From positions 275,590,001 to 275,654,000 of the forward strand of contig NC_088791.1 of NCBI RefSeq assembly GCF_011386835.1: DNA of 64,000 bases, given 5' to 3'. Shown in pieces: positions 8,779-49,302 of this stretch (positions are counted from its first letter, which is position 1; every line of letters starts with the position of its first letter). Source of the stretch: Chrysemys picta bellii. Lineage: Eukaryota. Made by a program: the position numbers and the translations under genes. The notes below the pieces were generated by a model. The model was not told where the DNA came from. It did not search any database and worked only from the letters and a program-made list of their open reading frames with translations.

Positions 8779-9716
8779 GTCCGTGGGGCTTCAAAGAGGG
8801 CAAACTGTGCACATACTATTGCTTATTACTCCTGGAAAGAAAAGTAGATGTTTAACAAAAAGCAACTTAATGCAACATTTGTAATGTACTTGCTGAACCA
8901 GATTTGGGAAATGTCTCATTGGGGTGGCTTTGAGTCTTTGTTTTGAACTGGTGTTTCTAGCAGTAGACGCAAACTAATTGCATTTTGCTATAGTTGCCGG
9001 CAAGGGCAAAGAAACTGCAAGAACTGCCTTTAGGTGATCAAAATATCTCTGTCAGCAAATATTGCCACACCCTGCTTATATAAGAGACAAGAATATTTAT
9101 TTTTTAAAAAGAGAGCATTTTGCCAGTGTTCTGTCCCAAATAGAACACAATCTGGATGTTAAGCACCCTTCCCTATTTTCTTTCTTTTTTAGTTCTAGAT
9201 GTTAATCTACTGGTCTCCTAAATGCACTAATGCATGAAATTGCTTCTAAAAATTCAAAGTTCTGACTAGTAAATATGGCTCCTATATCACTCTTCACAGC
9301 TGTGGAGCCACTACAGAAGTTCTCTAGATTCAGCGATTGTAGATGAACTGATTTATTGCACAAGTACTGTGATAGCAGAGAGAAAAACATGGCATCTCTG
9401 CTAGGTGGAACGTATAGCAAACTATGGCAGTTAACAAGCTTAACTGTAGAAAGAGGTAATAAGGATGCAGTGGGAGTGGTCAGCTATTAAGATGCCCTTT
9501 GTAACTTGGAGGGAAGTTTGTGGAAGGGTGCTCAATATAGCCATTGACCTTAAAGCTTCATTTAAAATGTTGCCTCCACTGTTAGAAAAGTGTGGTTTTT
9601 AGCTTATAATCAGTGTATTGTTGCTGAATATGATAGTAGAAATTGCTGTCTTCATTGCTGGCATGTATAGCCAATGTAATCTGGATTTCCAGTGATAGTT
9701 ATGTGATTCTTTGCAG

Positions 9717-9926
9717 ATGGGCTTGAGGGGAATGAATTGTTGCCACTGTCCCCTCTTGCTCCAGCCTTGGAGGAGGACCCTCTTTCTTTGATATTGCAAA
9801 ATGAGGATGCCCCAGATAAGGCTGGTGGGAGAAAAAAATCGGAAGAGTTGCAGAGTCTGTGGAGAAAAGCTATCCATCAACAAATCCTACTGCTTCGAAT
9901 GGAAAAAGAAAACCAGAAGCTGGAAG
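9717..9926 (+). CDS. TBC1D4: TBC1D4 coding exon (~exon 14)
   Basis: ttgcag| ... |gttagc, 210 nt, phase 1-1. Encodes [10 protein letters not shown]...[23 protein letters not shown] (calmodulin-binding region). Confidence 0.96.
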
Positions 9927-9950
9927 GTTAGCCACTCAGAGAAACAACTG

Positions 9951-10014
9951 GGCCTGGTTTTCAGAGGCCCAGACCACAAGCAGCTCCCATTGACTTCAAC
10001 TGAAAATCAGGGCC
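9951..10014. repeat. Short palindromic MITE-like element (CCATTGACTTC family)
   Basis: GGCCTGGTTTTCAG ... CTGAAAATCAGGGCC inverted ends around CCCATTGACTTCA. Related copies at ~16714-16785 and ~28773-28844. Confidence 0.55.
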
Positions 10015-10981
10015 AGTGCTATTATAAGTTATGCAGTAGTTTCAGAAATAGAATTGGTGCAAGACTGAGGTTTACAATCTTAGAAGCGCTGCTGTTCCAT
10101 GCAAAACTTGCAGTTTTTCCTTGATTTAGTGATTAAAATACCTGAAAAGACTGGGCATATTAAAGGATGACACAGCTGGCATATGACTTATTGTTCTGGT
10201 TGTTTCAAAAAAGGCATAGATGCAAAATCTTCCATGATTTAAACACTCTTTTCATGAGGTGGAGCAAAGATATAGCATACTGCAGTACATTCTCCATCAA
10301 GTTCCCCTTCTTTATAAAAGTACACGCTTATATGTCAGTTTTGCAATTTAAAAACATGCTTTCTGTCAGAGTAAGATTCTGCATACTTGTGTGTGTATAT
10401 ATTTAGTATAAACCATTGCTATACATATCCTAGGCAACCAGATTCTGGAATACCACCATACAGGATTTATTCCTCTTTCATCTTATAGCAAACTGGCATG
10501 AATACTTAAATCATCAGTGAACTGCTCTCTTCATGCCTCATTTCAACAGGGTAGCGAATGATTTTATATTGCACTGTCCCGATAGGTGTTATACATCATA
10601 AAAACATATGATGTTCCAACAAATGTTTCTTGTATATTTTCCAGTCTTTCCTACTCTACCAGACAAGTAATTAAGGTCCTAAATTTTTCATGAGCAATTA
10701 GTATTTTGGTGCTTCAATTTTTTGAGTGCTCAACTTGAGATACCCTAAAGGTGCTTCATTTTTCAGAAGACGAGTGCTCAGCACTTTATGAAAATCAGGT
10801 CCTGATAAGGGTCTGAAGTTGGACACACACTCTATTCATTTATCAACATTTTGGCCAAGATTCTTACTACTGTTATTCAGGATTCCTTCTACAAAAGGTA
10901 GTAGTCAACATCCTGGTCTAAATGTAAAACTTGTAGAAATCAAAAAAGATTTAATTTACACTTAGTGCCTTTACCCTAAAG

Positions 10982-11293
10982 CAGGGGTCGGCAACCTTTC
11001 AGAAGTGGTGTGCCAAGTCTTCATTTATTCACTCCGATTTCAGGTTTTGCGTGCCAGTCAGACATTTTAAAATATTTAGAAGATCTCTTTTCATAAGTCT
11101 ATAATATATAACTAAACTATTGTTGTATGTAAAGTAAATAAGGTTTTTAAAATGTTTAGGAAGTTTAATTTAAAATTAAATTAAAATGCAGAGCCCCCCG
11201 GACCAGTGGCCAGGACCCGGGCAGTGTGAGTACCACTGAAAAATTGGCTCGCGTGCCGCCTTTGGCACGCGTGCCATAGGTTGCCTACCCCTG
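10982..11293. mobile_element. hAT (Charlie-like) MITE
   Basis: TIRs CAGGGGTCGGCAACC / GGTTGCCTACCCCTG. Perfect 8-bp TSD CCCTAAAG. Confidence 0.9.
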
Positions 11294-12633
11294 CCCTAAA
11301 GAAACTGCAAATAGTAATTTGCATATATTGTCCTGTGCAGTCTTTAAGTTTCCAGAGGCTGGCATTATGCTGCAGTCTCATTCTTTCAGCATAGAAATCC
11401 TTACCATCCTCATTTTGTGAAAGTCTCATGCCCACCTCCCATTTCTCCATTTCTTTAGTGCACCATATAGGCACCAGTCCATGCTAAGGATACTAGGGGA
11501 GAAGAAGAAAAAAAATGGCAGGAGCCTTTCCATGTGACTGCAAACCCATGCCCTTGAATACACTGCTTTAGCACATATTGTGTTACCCTCCCAGTTTGAA
11601 CGACATAGAGTTTGTAGGGAACATCTACTGATTATTTAGTCATTGAAGAATGGCCAATCCAACCAAATCCTTTATTCTTGGCTATTTTTTTTTTTAGCAA
11701 CCTGCCAGTCTGTGTTTGGGAAGAGAAGAGGCCACAATGAATAAGCCCTGGTTATTCCTTTAGATTCTTTGTACTTCAGCAAGGGCTGTTTGTATCTTGA
11801 AATCTCAAACCTTGCAGGTATCACAGACACTTAAAACTAATCTGACCTCTGCAAGAACAAATGATAAAACAGCTAAAGAAATAAGTGGTTTATAGAGTAA
11901 AGAACATAAAGCTAATGCCTCTTTCTTAGTTAATGATTAACACTAAATGTGCATGTCTGGTCTCTGGTAAAAACTAGAAAATAACAGTGTAGTAACTGCA
12001 TTCCAGTTTTGAACCCACTCGGTTCTCTGACTTGTGGAGTTTTATCAGCTGAGAATGCATTGCTGCCAATACATTGGACTTAATCTCACCAAGTAAATGC
12101 AGGTGACTTTGCTTAAGGAACCTAGGCACTGGTTATCCAGTGTAAGAGGGGACAGGATGACTTGAGACAAAGTATAGGTTGTTCTGGAAATTTTCCCAGT
12201 CTCCATATAAATTTTGCATTTGTTTGGTTGGCATATTTATAGTCCAAGCACGTGTGGTATTGTGTGGAAAGCACCTATTGAAAGCTGACGCACTTTGAAG
12301 TGAGCAGGGTATTTCATTATTACACCTTGATTCAAATGGTGGTTGGTCTCCCAACACTACAGTCCATTACAGACTTCAGAAAATGTAAACATAAACCCAG
12401 AACGGGCTGAAACCTCTAGTGGCAGCCTGATTCTTAGTTGTATATTCATCACACTGATTATTATTGCTTTGGTTTTGATGTGCAATTTCCACCCCTTTAT
12501 GAAATAGCTCTCAGCAGTTCTTATCTGCTAATGTGTTGTATTAAATGTACTGATTAAAATATTAACAGAATCTCTCCCACTGTTCTTTGTGCCTTCGAGG
12601 AGACTTGAATGCTAATAGTTATTTGTTCTGCAG

Positions 12634-12636
12634 AAG
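12634..12636 (+). CDS. TBC1D4: Candidate 3-nt alternative microexon of TBC1D4 (adds one Glu)
   Basis: gctaat...ttatttgttctgcag|AAG|gtaaga inside a phase-1 intron. G|AA G|CA gives KLE-E-ASR. Confidence 0.6.
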
Positions 12637-14084
12637 GTAAGATTTGTGAAGCAAATACCTATTGTTTTAATTTTGATAGTGGCTAAAGGCTACTTTTTTA
12701 AACACAATATTTCTAGGTGATTTCACAACAGGAAAATTTAAAGAGAATGGTAGCAAGCAACTAAATCTATAAAAAGCCTAATTTTGCTGCCCTATTCTCG
12801 CTGAGCAGTGCCTTACTCCACATGCAGTTCCACTGATTTCAGTGGGGTTAGTTTTGGAGCAGAGTACCACTCAACGTAAATAAGGGTGCCAGAATCGAAT
12901 GCCTTTTTGGCAGTACAGGAATTTCGCATTCTTATGGTCTTGCATTTATGCAACAGTTTGCATAAAAAAAATCAGTTGTGTGTTTGTGTTTTTGTTTTTT
13001 TGTTTGTTTGTTTGTTTTTTGCCTTTGAAGAACAACTGTTGTTCCCTAAAGATAACTTTTTAAAAAAATCCAGGGGCAATATCCAAGTTTAGATTGAAGC
13101 TCGTTGAAGTAGGAGCTCTCCTAAATGCTTCATGCCTAGCACAAAGCGACTGGGTCCCCTAGACACTACCACAATACAAATAATTACAAGAATTGTTTAT
13201 TGGGCCCTCATCAGTCAGATAAAGATGATAAATTATAAAGCACTTGGGAATACTCGGCAACTAGACTTGTGGAATGGCCTAGACATTAATTCCTGATCCT
13301 GCATGCACTTATGTATGTGTCCCAATTAACTGAGGCTTGTCATGGGTTTCTTCCACTTTTTGCCGAAGCGTCGGGTATTGGCCATTTTCGGAAATAGGGT
13401 AGCTAGTTGAGGGACAGAAGGTCTGATTTGGCTTTGCAAGTCCTATGTTCCCATAGAATCCCCAGTGTTGGTTTGTATCATTCTGATCTGGGGAAAAAAC
13501 AGTTAAAGAATCATGGTTCCTCAGTGAACCATGTAAACTTACTTCCAACAGTGATCATGGTAAATGTGTAAGACATAGAGTTATAGGAATCCTTGAGGGA
13601 TCATATTGTGCAATAATGCAGTATGTAACCTGCTCACATGATTATCAAAGACTCTATTTCCAACAATTGGACTCTGGAACTGCATGTGGGTTAAATCTCA
13701 ACGTCAGTAGCACGTGTGTGCATTAAGCCCTCCACTCGCTAACAAATGCACAGTAAAACGGCTACTGTGACATTCCCAGGTAGAAATCAAAATTAGGCCT
13801 CCATGAAAATCCAGAATTACCTGACAGTTGTTTTAGAAAAGTGAGTCTGTAGGAGTTGCTAGAAGAAGTGAGCATAAGGCAGGACCTAATGAGAAGAGTA
13901 GGTGGTAGAGCATCAGACTGGGTTTAGCAAATGGTGCATCTTAGAGTCAGGGAGATTAAAAACTCTTACCACTTTCTGCTATCCTGCATTGTGACTCTGA
14001 GCAATGGTGTTAAGGGGAAAAGATGCTAAAATAAAAACCCCATTGCGGTGAGAAGCATCTGTTTGAAACTGTCATGATCTATTA

Positions 14085-14500
14085 CAGGGGTGGCCAACCT
14101 GAGCCTGAGAAGGAGCCAGAATTTACCAATGTATATTGCCAAAGAGCCACAGTAATAAGTCAGCAGCCCTCCATCAGCTGAATCCCACGGCTCCCAGCAT
14201 CTCCCACCTATCAGTGCCTCCTGCTCCCTCCCTACGCCTCCCGATCAGCTGTTTCGTGGATGCAGGAGGCTCTGGGGCGGGGAGGAGTGAGGGCACAGTA
14301 GGCTGAGGGGAGGGGACGGGAAGGAGTGAGAGGGGGCAGGGCCTGTGGCAAAGCCGGGGGTTGAGCAGTGAGCACCCCCCAGAACATTGGAAAGTTGGCA
14401 CCTGGAGCTCCAGCCCCGGAGTCAGTGCCTATACAAGGAGCTTCATATTAACTTCTGAAGAGCCACATGTGGCTCTGGAGCCACAGGTTGGCCACCCCTG
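14085..14500. mobile_element. hAT (Charlie-like) MITE
   Basis: TIRs CAGGGGTGGCCAACCTG / CAGGTTGGCCACCCCTG. Perfect 8-bp TSD ATCTATTA. Confidence 0.92.
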
Positions 14501-15210
14501 ATCTATTAGGACCACTATGAACAGTGTACCTGGTGGGACCACATAATGTAATGATCTTGACTTTGTCATTTAAAAGAGAAGTTTCCTAAAAAGACTTTAC
14601 CAAAGCTCTTGCAGTTCGAGAAGGAGCATTCAAAGTCTGAGATTTCTCACAGTGAAGCTATTTTAATGTGCAATATACATAAAGTAAAAATTATCTGATA
14701 AATTGCTTTGCACAATTGTTTGTTGTTGAGATGTCAACATTTAGCCACAGAAAGACAACCGATAAATACCTCTCCATCATCAGCAGAACTCAGGATCATG
14801 TCTTTTGAAATATGGAGAGATGATCCTTTTGTTCATTCCATTGACATTGGTTTAAGTATTATAAGGATTCTGTTGCAGAATATTCATTTCACTCAGCAAA
14901 GTTTTGCTAAAGTTAAGAGAAGGCGCAGTTGTGGGAAGGGGAGGAAACACATCTGATTTTTTTTTCTTCTATGTTTCTTGTACATTGATTTGTGACTTTA
15001 TCATGTTCTTTATTCAGCAATATGAGTCATGTGTCTAGAGAGGTATAGCCCAGCAGTTCATTTAAAGTCAGTCTCCTATCATTTATCCATTCATTCGAAG
15101 TGTCCTATGCAGTAACAGAAGAGAGATTCTGGATATTACCTTGGCTGTATTGAGATATTTGATTTCTGATATGATCTCTCATATACTCTCCCTCATGTTC
15201 TATATTCCAG

Positions 15211-15369
15211 CAAGCAGAGATGAACTCCAATCAAGAAAAGCTAAATTGGACTACCTTGAAGTTGGTACATGTCAGAAAGATGTCATAAATATCTGGGATA
15301 AGAAGTTATTAAACTGCAGAGCCAAAATCAGATGTGACATGGAGGATATTCATACCACTCTGAAAGAAG
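15211..15369 (+). CDS. TBC1D4: TBC1D4 coding exon (~exon 15)
   Basis: attccag| ... |gtattt, 159 nt. Encodes [19 protein letters not shown]...[12 protein letters not shown]. Confidence 0.96.
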
Positions 15370-16221
15370 GTATTTATTATGTATGATGTGTTTTGGCTGG
15401 GACATTTGGGAGACTTTTTTTGTTCAGTCTTTAAGGTTATTTAAACCAAATCTACCTTCAGTAAGCTTGTTCCAATAGCACCAAATCGGTAAAAATTGCC
15501 CGTTGCCTTTTTTCCCAAACACCAACTATTTTGCAATGAGAACATATCCTGTTTCTGTTATGCCTACAATATATTGAGACAGTGCTGCAGAAAGATCAAG
15601 CGAATGATTACATAGTTGTACTCCTGTATGTAAGGTGATGTCCCCAGATAGGTTAGCATTGGTGGGGATTTCTCCTAGGGCCTTTGGATTTAAAAGCGTG
15701 AACCTCTACTCTCTGAGATGAAGAACCCAGTTCCTTGGCTCAAGGCTGTAGCAGACTCCTAAACCTGTGTACATGGACTAGTCACTAGACAGGGGACAGA
15801 GGGCCACAGTGCATCAGTGTGGGTTATACATTTGTCTGGGGAAGCTCACCCTGACAATTCCCATATGGGTTACCCCTTGTAACACAATGCCCCAGTTGGG
15901 AATTGAATCTGAGATATCTGGACCTAAAATCATGAGCCTTTGTTGTTTAATCACAAAGGCTAAGTCCATTAGCTTGAAGTCCGTAGTAGACTCATAAACC
16001 TCTATGTGAACTAGCCATAACATGGCAACAAAACGACTACACTATTAGTGTGAGTTACATGTAGATTAAGTCTTGTGGTTCTCAGCCTTCAAGTAAGGAA
16101 CCTTAGCTATAATGCATTGTATGACATTATCTTTATCAAACAGAAGTCACTATTATAGATAAAAAGCTTTCAGAATATTCAGCTGCTCAGAGCATTTGTT
16201 TTCTCTCACCTCTGATTTTAG

Positions 16222-17082: not shown

Positions 17083-17190
17083 ATGTTACTTGTCTTAGAT
17101 TGTAAGGGACTATCTTTCTGTGTGTTTGTATAGCATCTAGCACAATGGGGCCTGATCCTGATTGGAAACTTGGTAATACTGAACTAGAAA
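17083..17190 (+). mobile_element. L2/MIR-type 3' tail remnant
   Basis: CTTAGATTGTAAG...TGTTTGTATAGCATCTAGCACAATGGGGCCTGATCC, typical of the amniote L2 3' end. Confidence 0.55.
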
Positions 17191-19130: not shown

Positions 19131-20348
19131 TAAGGTTACCATATTTCAGCGAGCAAAAAAGAGGACGGGAGGAGCCCCGCCCTAGCCCCGCCCCTGCCCC
19201 TCCCACTTCCCGCCCCCCCTGACCTCCCAACCCTCCCCCCGTTCCTTGTCCCCTGACTACCCCCTCCTGGGACCCCTGCCCCTAACTGCCCCCCAGGACT
19301 ATCTAAGCCTCCCTGCCTCTTGTCCCCTGACTGCCCCAACCTTTATCCACACCCCCACCCCCAGACAGACCCCTGGGACTCCCACGCCCCATCCAACCAC
19401 TCCCCACCCCCTGACAGCCCCCCCCCCCAGAACTCCCAACCCATCTAAACCCCTCTGCTCCCTGTCCCCTGACTGCTCCGATCCCTCTCCGCACTCCTGC
19501 CCCCTGACAGCCCCCCCCAGAACTCCCAACCCATCTAAACCCCTCTGCTCCCTGTCCCCTGACTGCTCCGATCCCTCTCCCCACTCCTGCCCCCTGACAG
19601 CTCCCCCCCAGAACTCCCAGCCCCCTACCCCCCCCCGCTCCTTGTCCCCTGACTGCCCCCTCCTGGGACCCCTGCTCCTAACTGCCCTCCAGAACCCCAC
19701 CCCCTACCTAAGTCTCCCTGTTCCTTGTCCCCTAACTGCCCCCTCCTAAGACCCCCCCCCCCAACTGCCCACCAGGACCCTACCCCCTACCTGTACCCTG
19801 ACTGCCCAAAACTTTCTCCACTCCCCCCCAAAAGCCCCCCCCCGTTTCTTGACTGCCCCCTCCAGAACCTCCCTGCCCCTTCTCCTGCCCCCCTTACCCT
19901 GCTGCTCAGAACAGGGTGTTGGGCTCTGTGCGAGCCGGACACGTGGCTAAGCTCCCCAGCACAACAAAACCCGGTCCCTGGCCCTGCACAACAAAACCCG
20001 GTCCCTGGTCCGGACCGGGTTGCAGGGGAGAGCTGCCCTTGTATCAGCACAAAGTGCTCTCGCTCCCGTTTTGCTACGCTGCATGGCAGAAACCGCTCCC
20101 AGTTGCAAAAGGGGAGGGCTGCATTTTGTGCTGAGACACTTGCTCAGAATGCAGGGCGGAGCTCCTCTCCAGCTGCTCCGGAGTCCAGCCCGGGACTTTC
20201 CTGCAGCCCTCCCAGCCGCTCGCTCTGCTGTGCCAGGGGAGGGGGGAAATCCCGGACATTGTGAGTGCTTTACAAATTCCCCCCGGACGCTATTTTTAGC
20301 ACAAAAAGGAGGACATGTCCGGGTAAATCCGGATGAATGGTAACCCTA
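19131..20348 (+). mobile_element. Non-autonomous hAT-type element (Blackjack-like TIR) inserted in L1
   Basis: TIRs TAAGGTTACCAT / ATGGTAACCCTA flanked by a 7-bp direct repeat ATTGAAT. C-rich ~90-bp internal tandem repeats. Confidence 0.88.
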
Positions 20349-47681: not shown

Positions 47682-48225
47682 ATGGAGTCCCAGAATCACA
47701 AAAGAGCTCCAACATGGACCGAACGGGAGATACTGGATCTGATTGCTGTATGGGGAGATGAATCCGTACTATCAGAACTCCATTCCAAAAGACGAAATGC
47801 CAAAATATTTGAAAAAATCTCCAAGGGCATGAAGGACAGAGGCTATAACAGGGACCCGCAGCAATGCCACGTGAAACTTAAGGAGCTCAGGCAAGCCTAC
47901 CAAAAAAACGAAGAGGCAAACATCCGCTCCGGGTCAGACCCCCAAACATGCCGCTTCTATGATGAGCTGCATGCAATTCTAGGGGGTGCCCCCACCACTA
48001 CCCCACCCCTGTTCGTGGACTTCTGCAAGGGGGGAGTCTCACGCAACAGGGATGAGGATTTTGGGGATGAGGAAGATGAGGAGGAGGAGGAGGGAAGTGC
48101 ACAGCAGGCAAGTGGAGAAACCGTTCTCCCAGACAGCCAGGAACTGTTTATCACCCTGGAGCCAATACCCTCCCAACCCTCCCAAGATAGGTTCACGGAC
48201 CCTGAAGGTGGAGAAGGCTCCTCTG
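47682..48225 (+). CDS. Harbinger Myb/SANT-like (trihelix) DNA-binding protein, exon 1
   Basis: MESQNHKRAPTWTEREILDLIAVWG...QQCHVKLKELRQAY. Donor G|gtgagt. Confidence 0.85.
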
Positions 48226-48784
48226 GTGAGTGTACCTTTGTAAATATAATACATGGTTTAAAAGCAAGCGTGTTTAATGATTAATTTGCCCTGAAGACTT
48301 GGGATGTATTCACGGCCAATACAGCTACTGGAATGCATTCAAGCAAAACCGTTCTTTATCTCTCTGTGTTATCCTCATGAGAGTGATATCATTCATGGTC
48401 ACCTGGTTGAAATAGGGGAATTTTATTAAGGGGACATTCAGAGGTGGCCATTCCTGCTGGGCTATGTGCCTGTGGCTGAAAAGAAATCATCCCTGCTGTT
48501 AGCCCCCCGGTGGGGGGAGGGGTGAAGCAATCATCCCAGAGAATTGTGGGGGGGGGGGAGGAGGGGGGGGGCGGTTTAGTTGGGTTTGTGCTGCATGTTA
48601 ACCCCAAAACTGCAGCCCCTCCGAAAACCAACAGGCCCTCAATATAAGAGGCAAAATGCGACCTTGTATTGAAAGCACATGTGCTATGTAATGTTAACAG
48701 CTTGGTTCACCGTGAAAGAGTCTACACATTGTTCTCTAAAATGTGTCTTTTAAAAGAATACTCTCCCTTTTTTTCCTCCCACAG

Positions 48785-49302
48785 GTGCAAATGTTTCAGC
48801 GCTCCCCCTATCATCTCCGACCCAGAGGCTAGCGCAGAAAAGAAGGCGAAAAAACTGCACTCGCAATGAAATGTTTTCTGAGCTCATGCAGTCCTCCCGC
48901 ACTGAAAGAGCTCAGCAGAATGCATGGAGGCAAACAATGGCAGAGTCCAGGAAAGCAGAAAATGAACACGAGGACAGGAGGGACGAGCAAGAGGAAAGGT
49001 GCTGGGAGCAAGAGGAGAGGTGGTGGCAGCGAGATGAGAGGAAGCAGGATGCAATGCTGAAGCTACTGGAGGATCAAACTGATATGCTCCAGCGTATGGT
49101 TGAGCTACAGGAAAGGCAGCAGGAGCACAGACCACTGCTGCAGCCCCTGTGTAACCGACCGCCCTCCTCCCCAAGTTCCATAGCTTCCTCACCCAGATGC
49201 CCAAGAATGCGGGGGCGGGGGGGGGGGAGGTTCCAGGCACCCAACCACTCCACCCCAGAGGACTGCCCAAGCAACAGAAGGCTGGCATTCAATAAGTTTT
49301 GA
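48785..49302 (+). CDS. Harbinger Myb/SANT-like protein, exon 2 (coiled-coil)
   Basis: Polypyrimidine tract then acag|. In frame with exon 1 and with ORF 48871-49302. Spliced ORF is 1062 nt = 353 aa with no stop. Confidence 0.8.

What the first reader, a model, noticed from the sequence alone, without database searches (positions are those of the whole stretch)
12575..12645. Candidate 3-nt microexon adding one Glu next to the AS160 calmodulin-binding helix
Deep in a 5.3-kb phase-1 intron the sequence reads: pyrimidine tract TCTCTCCCACTGTTCTTTGTGCCTTC, then AATGCTAAT (UGC plus branch-like CTAAT), then TTATTTGTTCTGCAG|AAG|GTAAGA. Inclusion keeps the frame and converts KLE-ASRDEL to KLE-E-ASRDEL, shifting helical register just before the GAP domain. 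A strong donor, a far-upstream pyrimidine tract and UGC near the 3' splice site are the established signature of SRRM3/SRRM4-dependent microexons. ORF finders and most annotation pipelines miss such exons. It may already be catalogued in mammals; I cannot check that here.
Basis: partly seen in the sequence, partly recalled or inferred. Interest (0 to 1): 0.72.

Follow-up and report, generated by a model that had tools for sequence, protein, structure and literature searches.

The report
Conserved 3-base TBC1D4 microexon (known)
The three bases AAG at 12634-12636 are the turtle copy of a real, very old 3-base exon of the glucose-transport regulator TBC1D4 that adds one glutamate; it is already in bird, rodent and dog gene models and is listed as an SRRM4-switched exon in human cells, so it is genuine but not new.

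Summary
Inclusion would turn KLE-ASRDEL into KLE-E-ASRDEL.

The motif alone is weak evidence: YAG-NNN-GTRAG occurs about once per 25 kb here. Conservation is decisive. Between turtle and bird, the only alignable non-exonic element in 28 kb of the gene is this island. The 10-nt core AGAAGGTAAG is invariant in the same intron of turtle, two birds, dog, an equid and three fish loci.

Gene models with exactly this extra Glu already exist for 14 birds, 7 rodents (including mouse isoform X5) and dog. A 3-nt human TBC1D4 exon, most likely this one, is VastDB event HsaEX1040144. It is an experimentally defined SRRM4 target in HEK293 cells (PSI 0.7 to 99.4; PMC7935315, S4 Data).

Turtle RNA contigs from two runs of unknown tissue show only the skipping junction, so inclusion in the turtle itself is inferred, not shown.

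No paper I could search discusses its function. The scan had not noted it before on other DNA.

The parts
9717..9926 (+). Upstream TBC1D4 coding exon (DUF3350 / calmodulin-binding region). It ends ...[10 protein letters not shown] plus the first base G of a split codon.
   Evidence: PF11830 hits; tblastn with Chrysemys TBC1D4 P0309, 98.6% identity. Spliced RNA contigs end here.
9927..15210 (+). Phase-1 intron of 5,284 nt (GT..AG) that hosts the microexon.
   Evidence: The direct exon-exon joint skipping 5,284 nt is seen in contigs of runs X1 and X21.
12556..12650 (+). Conserved intronic island around the microexon. It extends to 12698 against the sandgrouse locus.
   Evidence: It is the only non-exonic blastn hit between the window and bird loci L001 and L013. 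It also aligns to the dog locus L002.
12571..12596 (+). Distal pyrimidine-rich tract ending in a UGC (12590-12592) that is kept in all amniote copies.
12595..12610 (+). Spacer block TCGAGGAGACTTGAAT, identical in turtle and both birds and similar in dog and equid. Its role is unknown; a splicing enhancer is inferred.
12612..12616 (+). CTAAT, a candidate branch site 17-18 nt before the acceptor. This is inferred, and the sequence is not conserved letter for letter.
12619..12633 (+). Proximal pyrimidine tract and CAG acceptor.
   Evidence: The AG is invariant in 7 of 7 aligned loci.
12634..12636 (+). 3-nt microexon AAG. With the split codon it inserts one Glu (KLE-E-ASRDEL).
   Evidence: invariant; annotated +Glu isoforms; sandgrouse model; human VastDB HsaEX1040144.
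12637..12642 (+). Strong donor GTAAGA. GTAAG is invariant in all loci.
15211..15369 (+). Downstream TBC1D4 exon (A)[18 protein letters not shown]..., the start of the crystallised RabGAP domain.

Best explanation
AAG at 12634-12636 is the turtle orthologue of a genuine, alternatively spliced 3-nt cassette microexon of TBC1D4 (AS160). When included, it inserts one glutamate between the calmodulin-binding region (...[10 protein letters not shown]) and the start of the RabGAP domain (ASRDEL...). It is skipped by default. It is most likely included where SRRM4 or SRRM3 is expressed (neurons, probably endocrine cells), through the strong GTAAG donor and the conserved upstream pyrimidine/UGC island. 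Shown: the sequence, frame and gene identity; conservation from fish to mammals; annotated +Glu isoforms in orthologues; SRRM4 responsiveness of the human exon; and skipping in two turtle runs. Inferred: inclusion in turtle tissues, SRRM3/4 dependence in the turtle, and any effect of the extra Glu on calmodulin or GAP coupling.
For: Sequence and frame. Gene identity. The taxon is a cryptodiran turtle: the exon is 98.6% identical to Chrysemys, Terrapene and Gopherus TBC1D4. Conservation: bird L001, dog L002/L003 and equid L004/L005 all carry AG|AAG|GTAAG in the same intron, and the island is the only alignable intronic piece. Against sandgrouse L013, all ten blastn hits over 28.5 kb are coding exons or 3'UTR except this island. 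Three fish loci each carry exactly one AG|AAG|GTAAG in the same intron, and the 10-nt core is invariant in the alignment. Chance expectation for that 10-mer in a 1.3-5.3-kb intron is about 0.001-0.005. Annotation: 13 rodent entries (Mus musculus isoform X5, Mesocricetus, Peromyscus, Nannospalax, Ictidomys, Sciurus, Jaculus) and 15 entries from 14 birds plus dog read KLE-E-A(S/R)RDEL. In the sandgrouse model the extra residue is covered by neither flanking exon. Regulation: PMC7935315 S4 Data lists TBC1D4 HsaEX1040144, 3 nt, PSI 0.705 with GFP against 99.38 with SRRM4 in HEK293. S6 Data gives 0 to 48 and 0 to 72 after SRRM4 induction in cancer lines, and PSI is below 1 in normal non-neural tissues.
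Against: No turtle RNA evidence of inclusion was found. Contigs of two runs (X1 at depth 56.8, X21 at depth 5.5) join 9926 directly to 15211, and no contig carries the extra AAG. The tissue is unknown and contigs drop minor variants, so this is weak. All 27 Logan mRNA-contig protein clusters in the lists have the skipping form, so inclusion is minor or tissue-restricted. The four turtle entries retrieved (Ensembl/UniProt, about 1,022 aa) lack the Glu. That HsaEX1040144 is this same junction is inferred from its length of 3, the gene, and its position about 25 kb from the 3' end. It was not read from human DNA, which I did not fetch on purpose.
Confidence: 0.88

Rival explanations
1. It is a chance splice-site look-alike in a long intron that is never spliced in.
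For: YAG-NNN-GTRAG occurs 5 times in the window on both strands, about 0.2 expected per intron of this size. A second such motif at 17096 is not conserved. Turtle contigs show only skipping.
Against: The 10-nt core is invariant in the same intron in turtle, two birds, dog, an equid and three fish loci. It sits in the only conserved intronic island. +Glu isoforms are annotated in 22 species.
Confidence: 0.03
2. The island is conserved for another reason: an intronic enhancer, a structured non-coding RNA, or a longer poison exon (for example 12570-12636, which has an in-frame TAA). On this view the AAG is incidental.
For: Conservation extends about 80-100 nt upstream of the AAG, including a 16-nt block identical in turtle and birds.
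Against: There is no Rfam match over 12200-13000 apart from one far-sub-threshold hit outside the island. The consensus fold is weak, -4.7 kcal/mol with a positive covariation term. Indels in the upstream part argue against coding. The invariant letters are exactly the acceptor AG, the exon and the donor GTAAG. Long conserved upstream flanks are typical of microexons (established knowledge). The annotated products carry exactly one extra Glu.
Confidence: 0.05
3. It is a real microexon, but in turtles it is not SRRM3/4-controlled or neural. Instead it is a low-level or broadly used variant under other factors such as RBFOX or PTBP.
For: The UGC next to the acceptor is absent in birds, the equid and fish. 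Dog and equid carry UGCAUG (an RBFOX motif) about 20 nt upstream of the acceptor. Many bird models, including those for genomes with little RNA data, use the +Glu form.
Against: The human exon switches from under 1% to 99% on SRRM4 expression alone. A UGC about 43 nt upstream next to a pyrimidine tract is kept in all amniote copies.
Confidence: 0.15

Closest known systems
Human TBC1D4 3-nt microexon, VastDB event HsaEX1040144 (chr13:75308250-75308252)
   Same: Same gene and same 3-nt length. It lies a comparable distance from the 3' end of the gene. It is skipped in non-neural tissue and fully included on SRRM4 expression (PMC7935315 S4 and S6 Data).
   Different: Identity of the junction was inferred, not read from human DNA, which I deliberately did not fetch. 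The turtle copy has no RNA evidence of inclusion yet.
RefSeq/Gnomon TBC1D4 isoforms carrying KLE-E-A(S/R)RDEL (for example Mus musculus isoform X5, dog isoform X4 XP_022263735.1, Aquila chrysaetos X5, Pterocles gutturalis)
   Same: The extra Glu is at exactly this exon junction. The dog-identical locus L002 and the sandgrouse locus L013 carry AG|AAG|GTAAG in the orthologous island.
   Different: These are predicted models. The four turtle entries retrieved lack the Glu.
Other 3-nt microexons, for example cytohesin-1 (adds a Gly and switches phosphoinositide specificity, PMC6314551), and VDAC3 and MON2 in the same SRRM4 target tables
   Same: One residue is inserted at a functional interface, and the exon is deeply conserved and missed by standard aligners and ORF finders.
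   Different: A different gene and residue. For TBC1D4 no functional consequence has been reported in any paper I could search.

Membership tests
SRRM3/SRRM4-dependent (neural/endocrine) microexons | Length of 3-27 nt that preserves the frame | tested here: met
   A 3-nt exon in a phase-1 intron; GAA G|AA G|CA reads E-E-A.
SRRM3/SRRM4-dependent (neural/endocrine) microexons | High conservation of the exon and its flanking intron across vertebrates | tested here: met
   The core is invariant in turtle, birds, dog, an equid and three fish loci. The island is the only conserved intronic element.
SRRM3/SRRM4-dependent (neural/endocrine) microexons | UGC and UC-rich enhancer elements upstream of the 3' splice site | tested here: inconclusive
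   The turtle has UGC at -43, -23 and -4, plus a UCUCUCC tract. Only the -43 UGC is kept in all amniotes, and none is evident in the fish loci. About one UGC per 64 nt is expected by chance.
SRRM3/SRRM4-dependent (neural/endocrine) microexons | Inclusion depends on SRRM4 or SRRM3 | not testable with these tools
   This cannot be tested for the turtle. For the human orthologue, PSI goes from 0.705 to 99.38 on SRRM4 overexpression in HEK293 (PMC7935315 S4 Data).
SRRM3/SRRM4-dependent (neural/endocrine) microexons | Tissue-restricted inclusion, skipped elsewhere | tested here: inconclusive
   Two turtle-lineage runs of unknown tissue show only the skipping joint. All 27 Logan mRNA-contig clusters are skipping forms. 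Human non-neural PSI is below 1. No neural turtle data were available.
TBC1D4 (AS160) orthologue | Closer to TBC1D4 than to TBC1D1, with the DUF3350/CBD exon followed by the RabGAP-TBC domain | tested here: met
   71.6 bits against 31.3 bits. Nine exons match Chrysemys TBC1D4 at 84-100% identity. Domain order is as described in PMC8131924.

The most novel reading that the evidence does not exclude
The microexon dates back at least to the common ancestor of bony vertebrates, since it is present in three fish loci. It may act as a neuron- or endocrine-specific switch that changes how calmodulin binding is coupled to RabGAP activity in TBC1D4. No searchable paper has examined this function. The TBC1D1 paralogue of the green turtle shows no equivalent.
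Probability: 0.3. Interest if true: 0.55.

Novelty: already known. Interest (0 to 1): 0.3.

Why it matters
TBC1D4/AS160 is the central brake on GLUT4 traffic, and its calmodulin-binding region has been linked to contraction-stimulated glucose uptake. A switch-like, 400-million-year-old single-residue insertion directly after that region, turned on by SRRM4, suggests a neuron- or endocrine-specific tuning of the protein that the TBC1D4 literature has not addressed. For genome annotation, it shows that reading the sequence alone can recover a 3-nt exon that ORF finders miss and that the retrieved turtle gene models lack. As a discovery it is not new: the exon is in VastDB and in many RefSeq models.

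Tried and rejected
(1) Reads. The single read-laying run (X1, X3, X23, X21) gave only the skipping joint. X3 and X23 did not cover the exons, so they add nothing.

(2) The word search with the upstream exon alone returned only genomic ORFs reading into the intron (KLEG*), not spliced products. These were still useful as handles to fetch orthologous introns.

(3) Locus P0022 had no DNA available. Locus L007 (an unidentified mammal) ends 2.7 kb after the exon without the motif, so it is uninformative.

(4) Paralogue assignment of fish loci L008 and L010 failed. PDB scores were tied between TBC1D1 and TBC1D4, and a 9-sequence tree was uninformative because of a very long fish branch. Their junction (AIHQQ...RLE|ASRDEL) is TBC1D4-like, whereas true TBC1D1 reads AILQQ...KLQ|ASENDLL.

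(5) TBC1D1 of the green turtle (L012, a 13.2-kb intron with 1.9 kb of N) and of the song sparrow (L011) show no equivalent microexon or island.

(6) AlphaFold2 of the CBD-GAP region with and without Glu gave mean pLDDT of 51 and 46. The junction falls in a long predicted helix (36-76 and 35-77), but confidence is too low to support the register argument.

(7) Structured-RNA alternative: there is no Rfam family and the consensus fold is weak.

(8) Literature. No main text pairs TBC1D4 or AS160 with microexons. Supplements of MicroExonator and of the 2025 zebrafish microexon paper had no hit. Two other papers held no supplements, and Irimia 2014 is not held.

The joined (spliced) exon model was never built or searched; exons were searched one by one by reference. 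Clusters P0010-P0017, which I take to be human or primate genomic ORFs, were not fetched, and no human DNA was fetched to confirm HsaEX1040144's junction.

Full report
**Observation.** The window reads ...ttatttgttctgcag|AAG|gtaaga... with AAG at 12634-12636. The upstream exon is 9717-9926 and ends CTG GAA G|gttagc. The downstream exon is 15211-15369 and begins |CA AGC AGA GAT GAA CTC. The intron is therefore 9927-15210, 5,284 nt, phase 1. Inserting AAG gives GAA GAA GCA, so KLE-ASRDEL becomes KLE-E-ASRDEL, as claimed. The window contains no N.

**Gene and organism.** The downstream exon matches the crystallised RabGAP domain of TBC1D4 (3qyb, 71.6 bits) far better than that of TBC1D1 (3qye, 31.3 bits). 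Nine exons between 8613 and 35742 match Chrysemys picta TBC1D4. The two exons flanking the intron are 98.6% and 98.2% identical to Chrysemys, Terrapene and Gopherus TBC1D4, so the window comes from a cryptodiran turtle. The upstream exon carries Pfam DUF3350. This is the region called the calmodulin-binding domain, which lies just before the GAP domain (PMC8131924).

**Is the motif more than chance?** On its own it is not. YAG-NNN-GTRAG occurs five times on the two strands of the window, about 0.2 expected per intron of this size. A second instance at 17096 is not conserved.

**Conservation.** I used the genomic ORFs found with the upstream exon as handles to fetch orthologous introns.
- In a bird contig (L001; exons 82-88% identical in DNA; intron 3.6 kb), the only parts of window 9000-16000 that align are the two exons and 12556-12650, which carries tttacag|AAG|gtaag.
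- The same motif and island occur in a contig whose exons are identical to dog TBC1D4 (L002/L003) and in an equid-like contig (L004/L005).
- Across 28.5 kb of the gene compared with the sandgrouse locus L013, all ten blastn hits are coding exons or the 3'UTR except this island, 12556-12698.
- Three fish loci with a TBC1D4-type junction (RLE|ASRDEL) each contain exactly one AG|AAG|GTAAG in the same intron.
- In the seven-way alignment the invariant run is AG-AAG-GTAAG, that is, the acceptor, the exon and the donor.

A given 10-mer is expected about 0.001-0.005 times per intron of these sizes, so repeated chance occurrence is excluded. There is no Rfam family at the island, and its consensus fold is weak. 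The upstream part has indels, so it is non-coding.

**Is it spliced?** The only reads call allowed showed spliced contigs in two runs (X1 at depth 56.8, X21 at depth 5.5). Both join 9926 directly to 15211 (GT..AG, skipping 5,284 nt). No contig carried an extra AAG or a joint to 12634. Tissues are unknown and contigs drop minor variants. This shows that skipping is the major form there, not that inclusion is absent. X1 also holds an unspliced contig, 12270-12888, in which the motif is unchanged.

**Is it annotated elsewhere?** I obtained spliced TBC1D4 proteins from the one exhaustive search and used them as long queries restricted to the junction region.
- Among the 120 best hits to a hamster query, 13 read [16 protein letters not shown]. 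They cover Mus musculus isoform X5 (1,252 aa, against isoform 2 at 1,251 aa), Mesocricetus, Peromyscus, Nannospalax, Ictidomys, Sciurus and Jaculus.
- Among the hits to a snake query, 15 read KLE-E-ASRDEL: 14 birds from tinamou to passerines, plus dog isoform X4.
- In the sandgrouse, whose NCBI model carries the Glu, residue 315 is covered by neither flanking exon. The orthologous island holds tatag|AAG|gtaag at L013 20099-20101.
- All 27 clusters derived only from assembled mRNA contigs have the skipping form, consistent with a minor or tissue-restricted isoform.
- The four turtle entries retrieved lack the Glu.

**Regulation.** No main text in the library pairs TBC1D4 or AS160 with microexons. 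The supplements of PMC7935315 do list the exon.
- S4 Data lists TBC1D4, event HsaEX1040144, chr13:75308250-75308252, length 3, PSI 0.705 with GFP and 99.38 with SRRM4. It is one of 314 exons defined as SRRM4 targets in HEK293 cells.
- S6 Data gives 0 to 48 and 0 to 72 after SRRM4 induction in cancer lines.
- The normal-tissue table gives PSI below 1.

That this event is the same junction is an inference. It rests on its length, the gene, and its position about 25 kb from the 3' end of the gene (gene coordinates from my own memory), compared with 23 kb in the turtle.

**Mechanism.**
- Shown: a strong, invariant donor; an invariant acceptor; and a conserved upstream island holding a pyrimidine tract and a UGC about 43 nt upstream in all amniotes.
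- Inferred: exon definition fails by default for a 3-nt exon. SRRM4 or SRRM3 bound near the UGC/UC elements rescues recognition in neurons and endocrine cells, as established for this exon class.
- Not supported as a conserved feature: the UGC adjacent to the acceptor, which is absent in birds, the equid and fish.
- Protein level: the Glu falls between the calmodulin-binding region and the first GAP-domain helix. AlphaFold2 models with and without the Glu place the junction in one long helix (36-76 and 35-77), but at pLDDT of about 45-53, which is too low to rely on.

**Paralogue.** True TBC1D1 reads ...KLQ|ASENDLL. The 13.2-kb orthologous intron of green-turtle TBC1D1 (with 1.9 kb of gaps) shows no equivalent exon or island. 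Which fish paralogues carry the exon could not be settled.

**Rules followed.** Exons were searched one at a time by reference, and the joined spliced model was not built or searched. Clusters P0010-P0017 look human or primate and were not fetched.

**Verdict.** The exon is real and ancient, but it is already catalogued in VastDB, in a published SRRM4 target list and in RefSeq models. What remains open is its function and its use in turtles.

Noticed in passing
window 17096-17106: There is a second YAG|ATT|GTAAG motif in the next-but-one TBC1D4 intron. It has no counterpart in the two bird loci, so it is probably chance.
   Followed up: partly
window 10979-11372 and 13934-14524: Contig depth is very high in all four runs (up to about 57,000), which marks interspersed repeats inside the intron. 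Run X1 (organism A) joins 13569 to 14762 with one T between. This is a 1,192-nt insertion/deletion difference between that relative and the window, spanning the second repeat.
   Followed up: no
L002 5035-5045 and L004 4128-4138: The dog and equid copies carry UGCAUG (an RBFOX-type motif) about 20 nt upstream of the microexon acceptor, where turtle and birds have AATGCTAAT and AATACTATT.
   Followed up: no
P0282 (turkey, UniProt/Ensembl model): This model reads KLE-V-ASRDEL at the same junction, a Val instead of Glu. It is probably a gene-model artefact around the 3-nt exon.
   Followed up: no
L013 19692-19701: The sandgrouse intron holds a second, non-orthologous ttttcag|AGG|gtgaaa that would also encode Glu. 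I could not see which site the NCBI model uses; the conserved site is at 20099-20101.
   Followed up: partly
L012 29545-42712 (Chelonia mydas TBC1D1): The paralogous intron of TBC1D1 (13.2 kb, with 1.9 kb of N) has no equivalent microexon or island. The deposited protein model P0084 reads into this intron after KLQ.
   Followed up: partly
window 47682-49302: An earlier first-stage note (s1-318459) flags a Harbinger Myb/SANT gene here, downstream of TBC1D4. I did not examine it.
   Followed up: no
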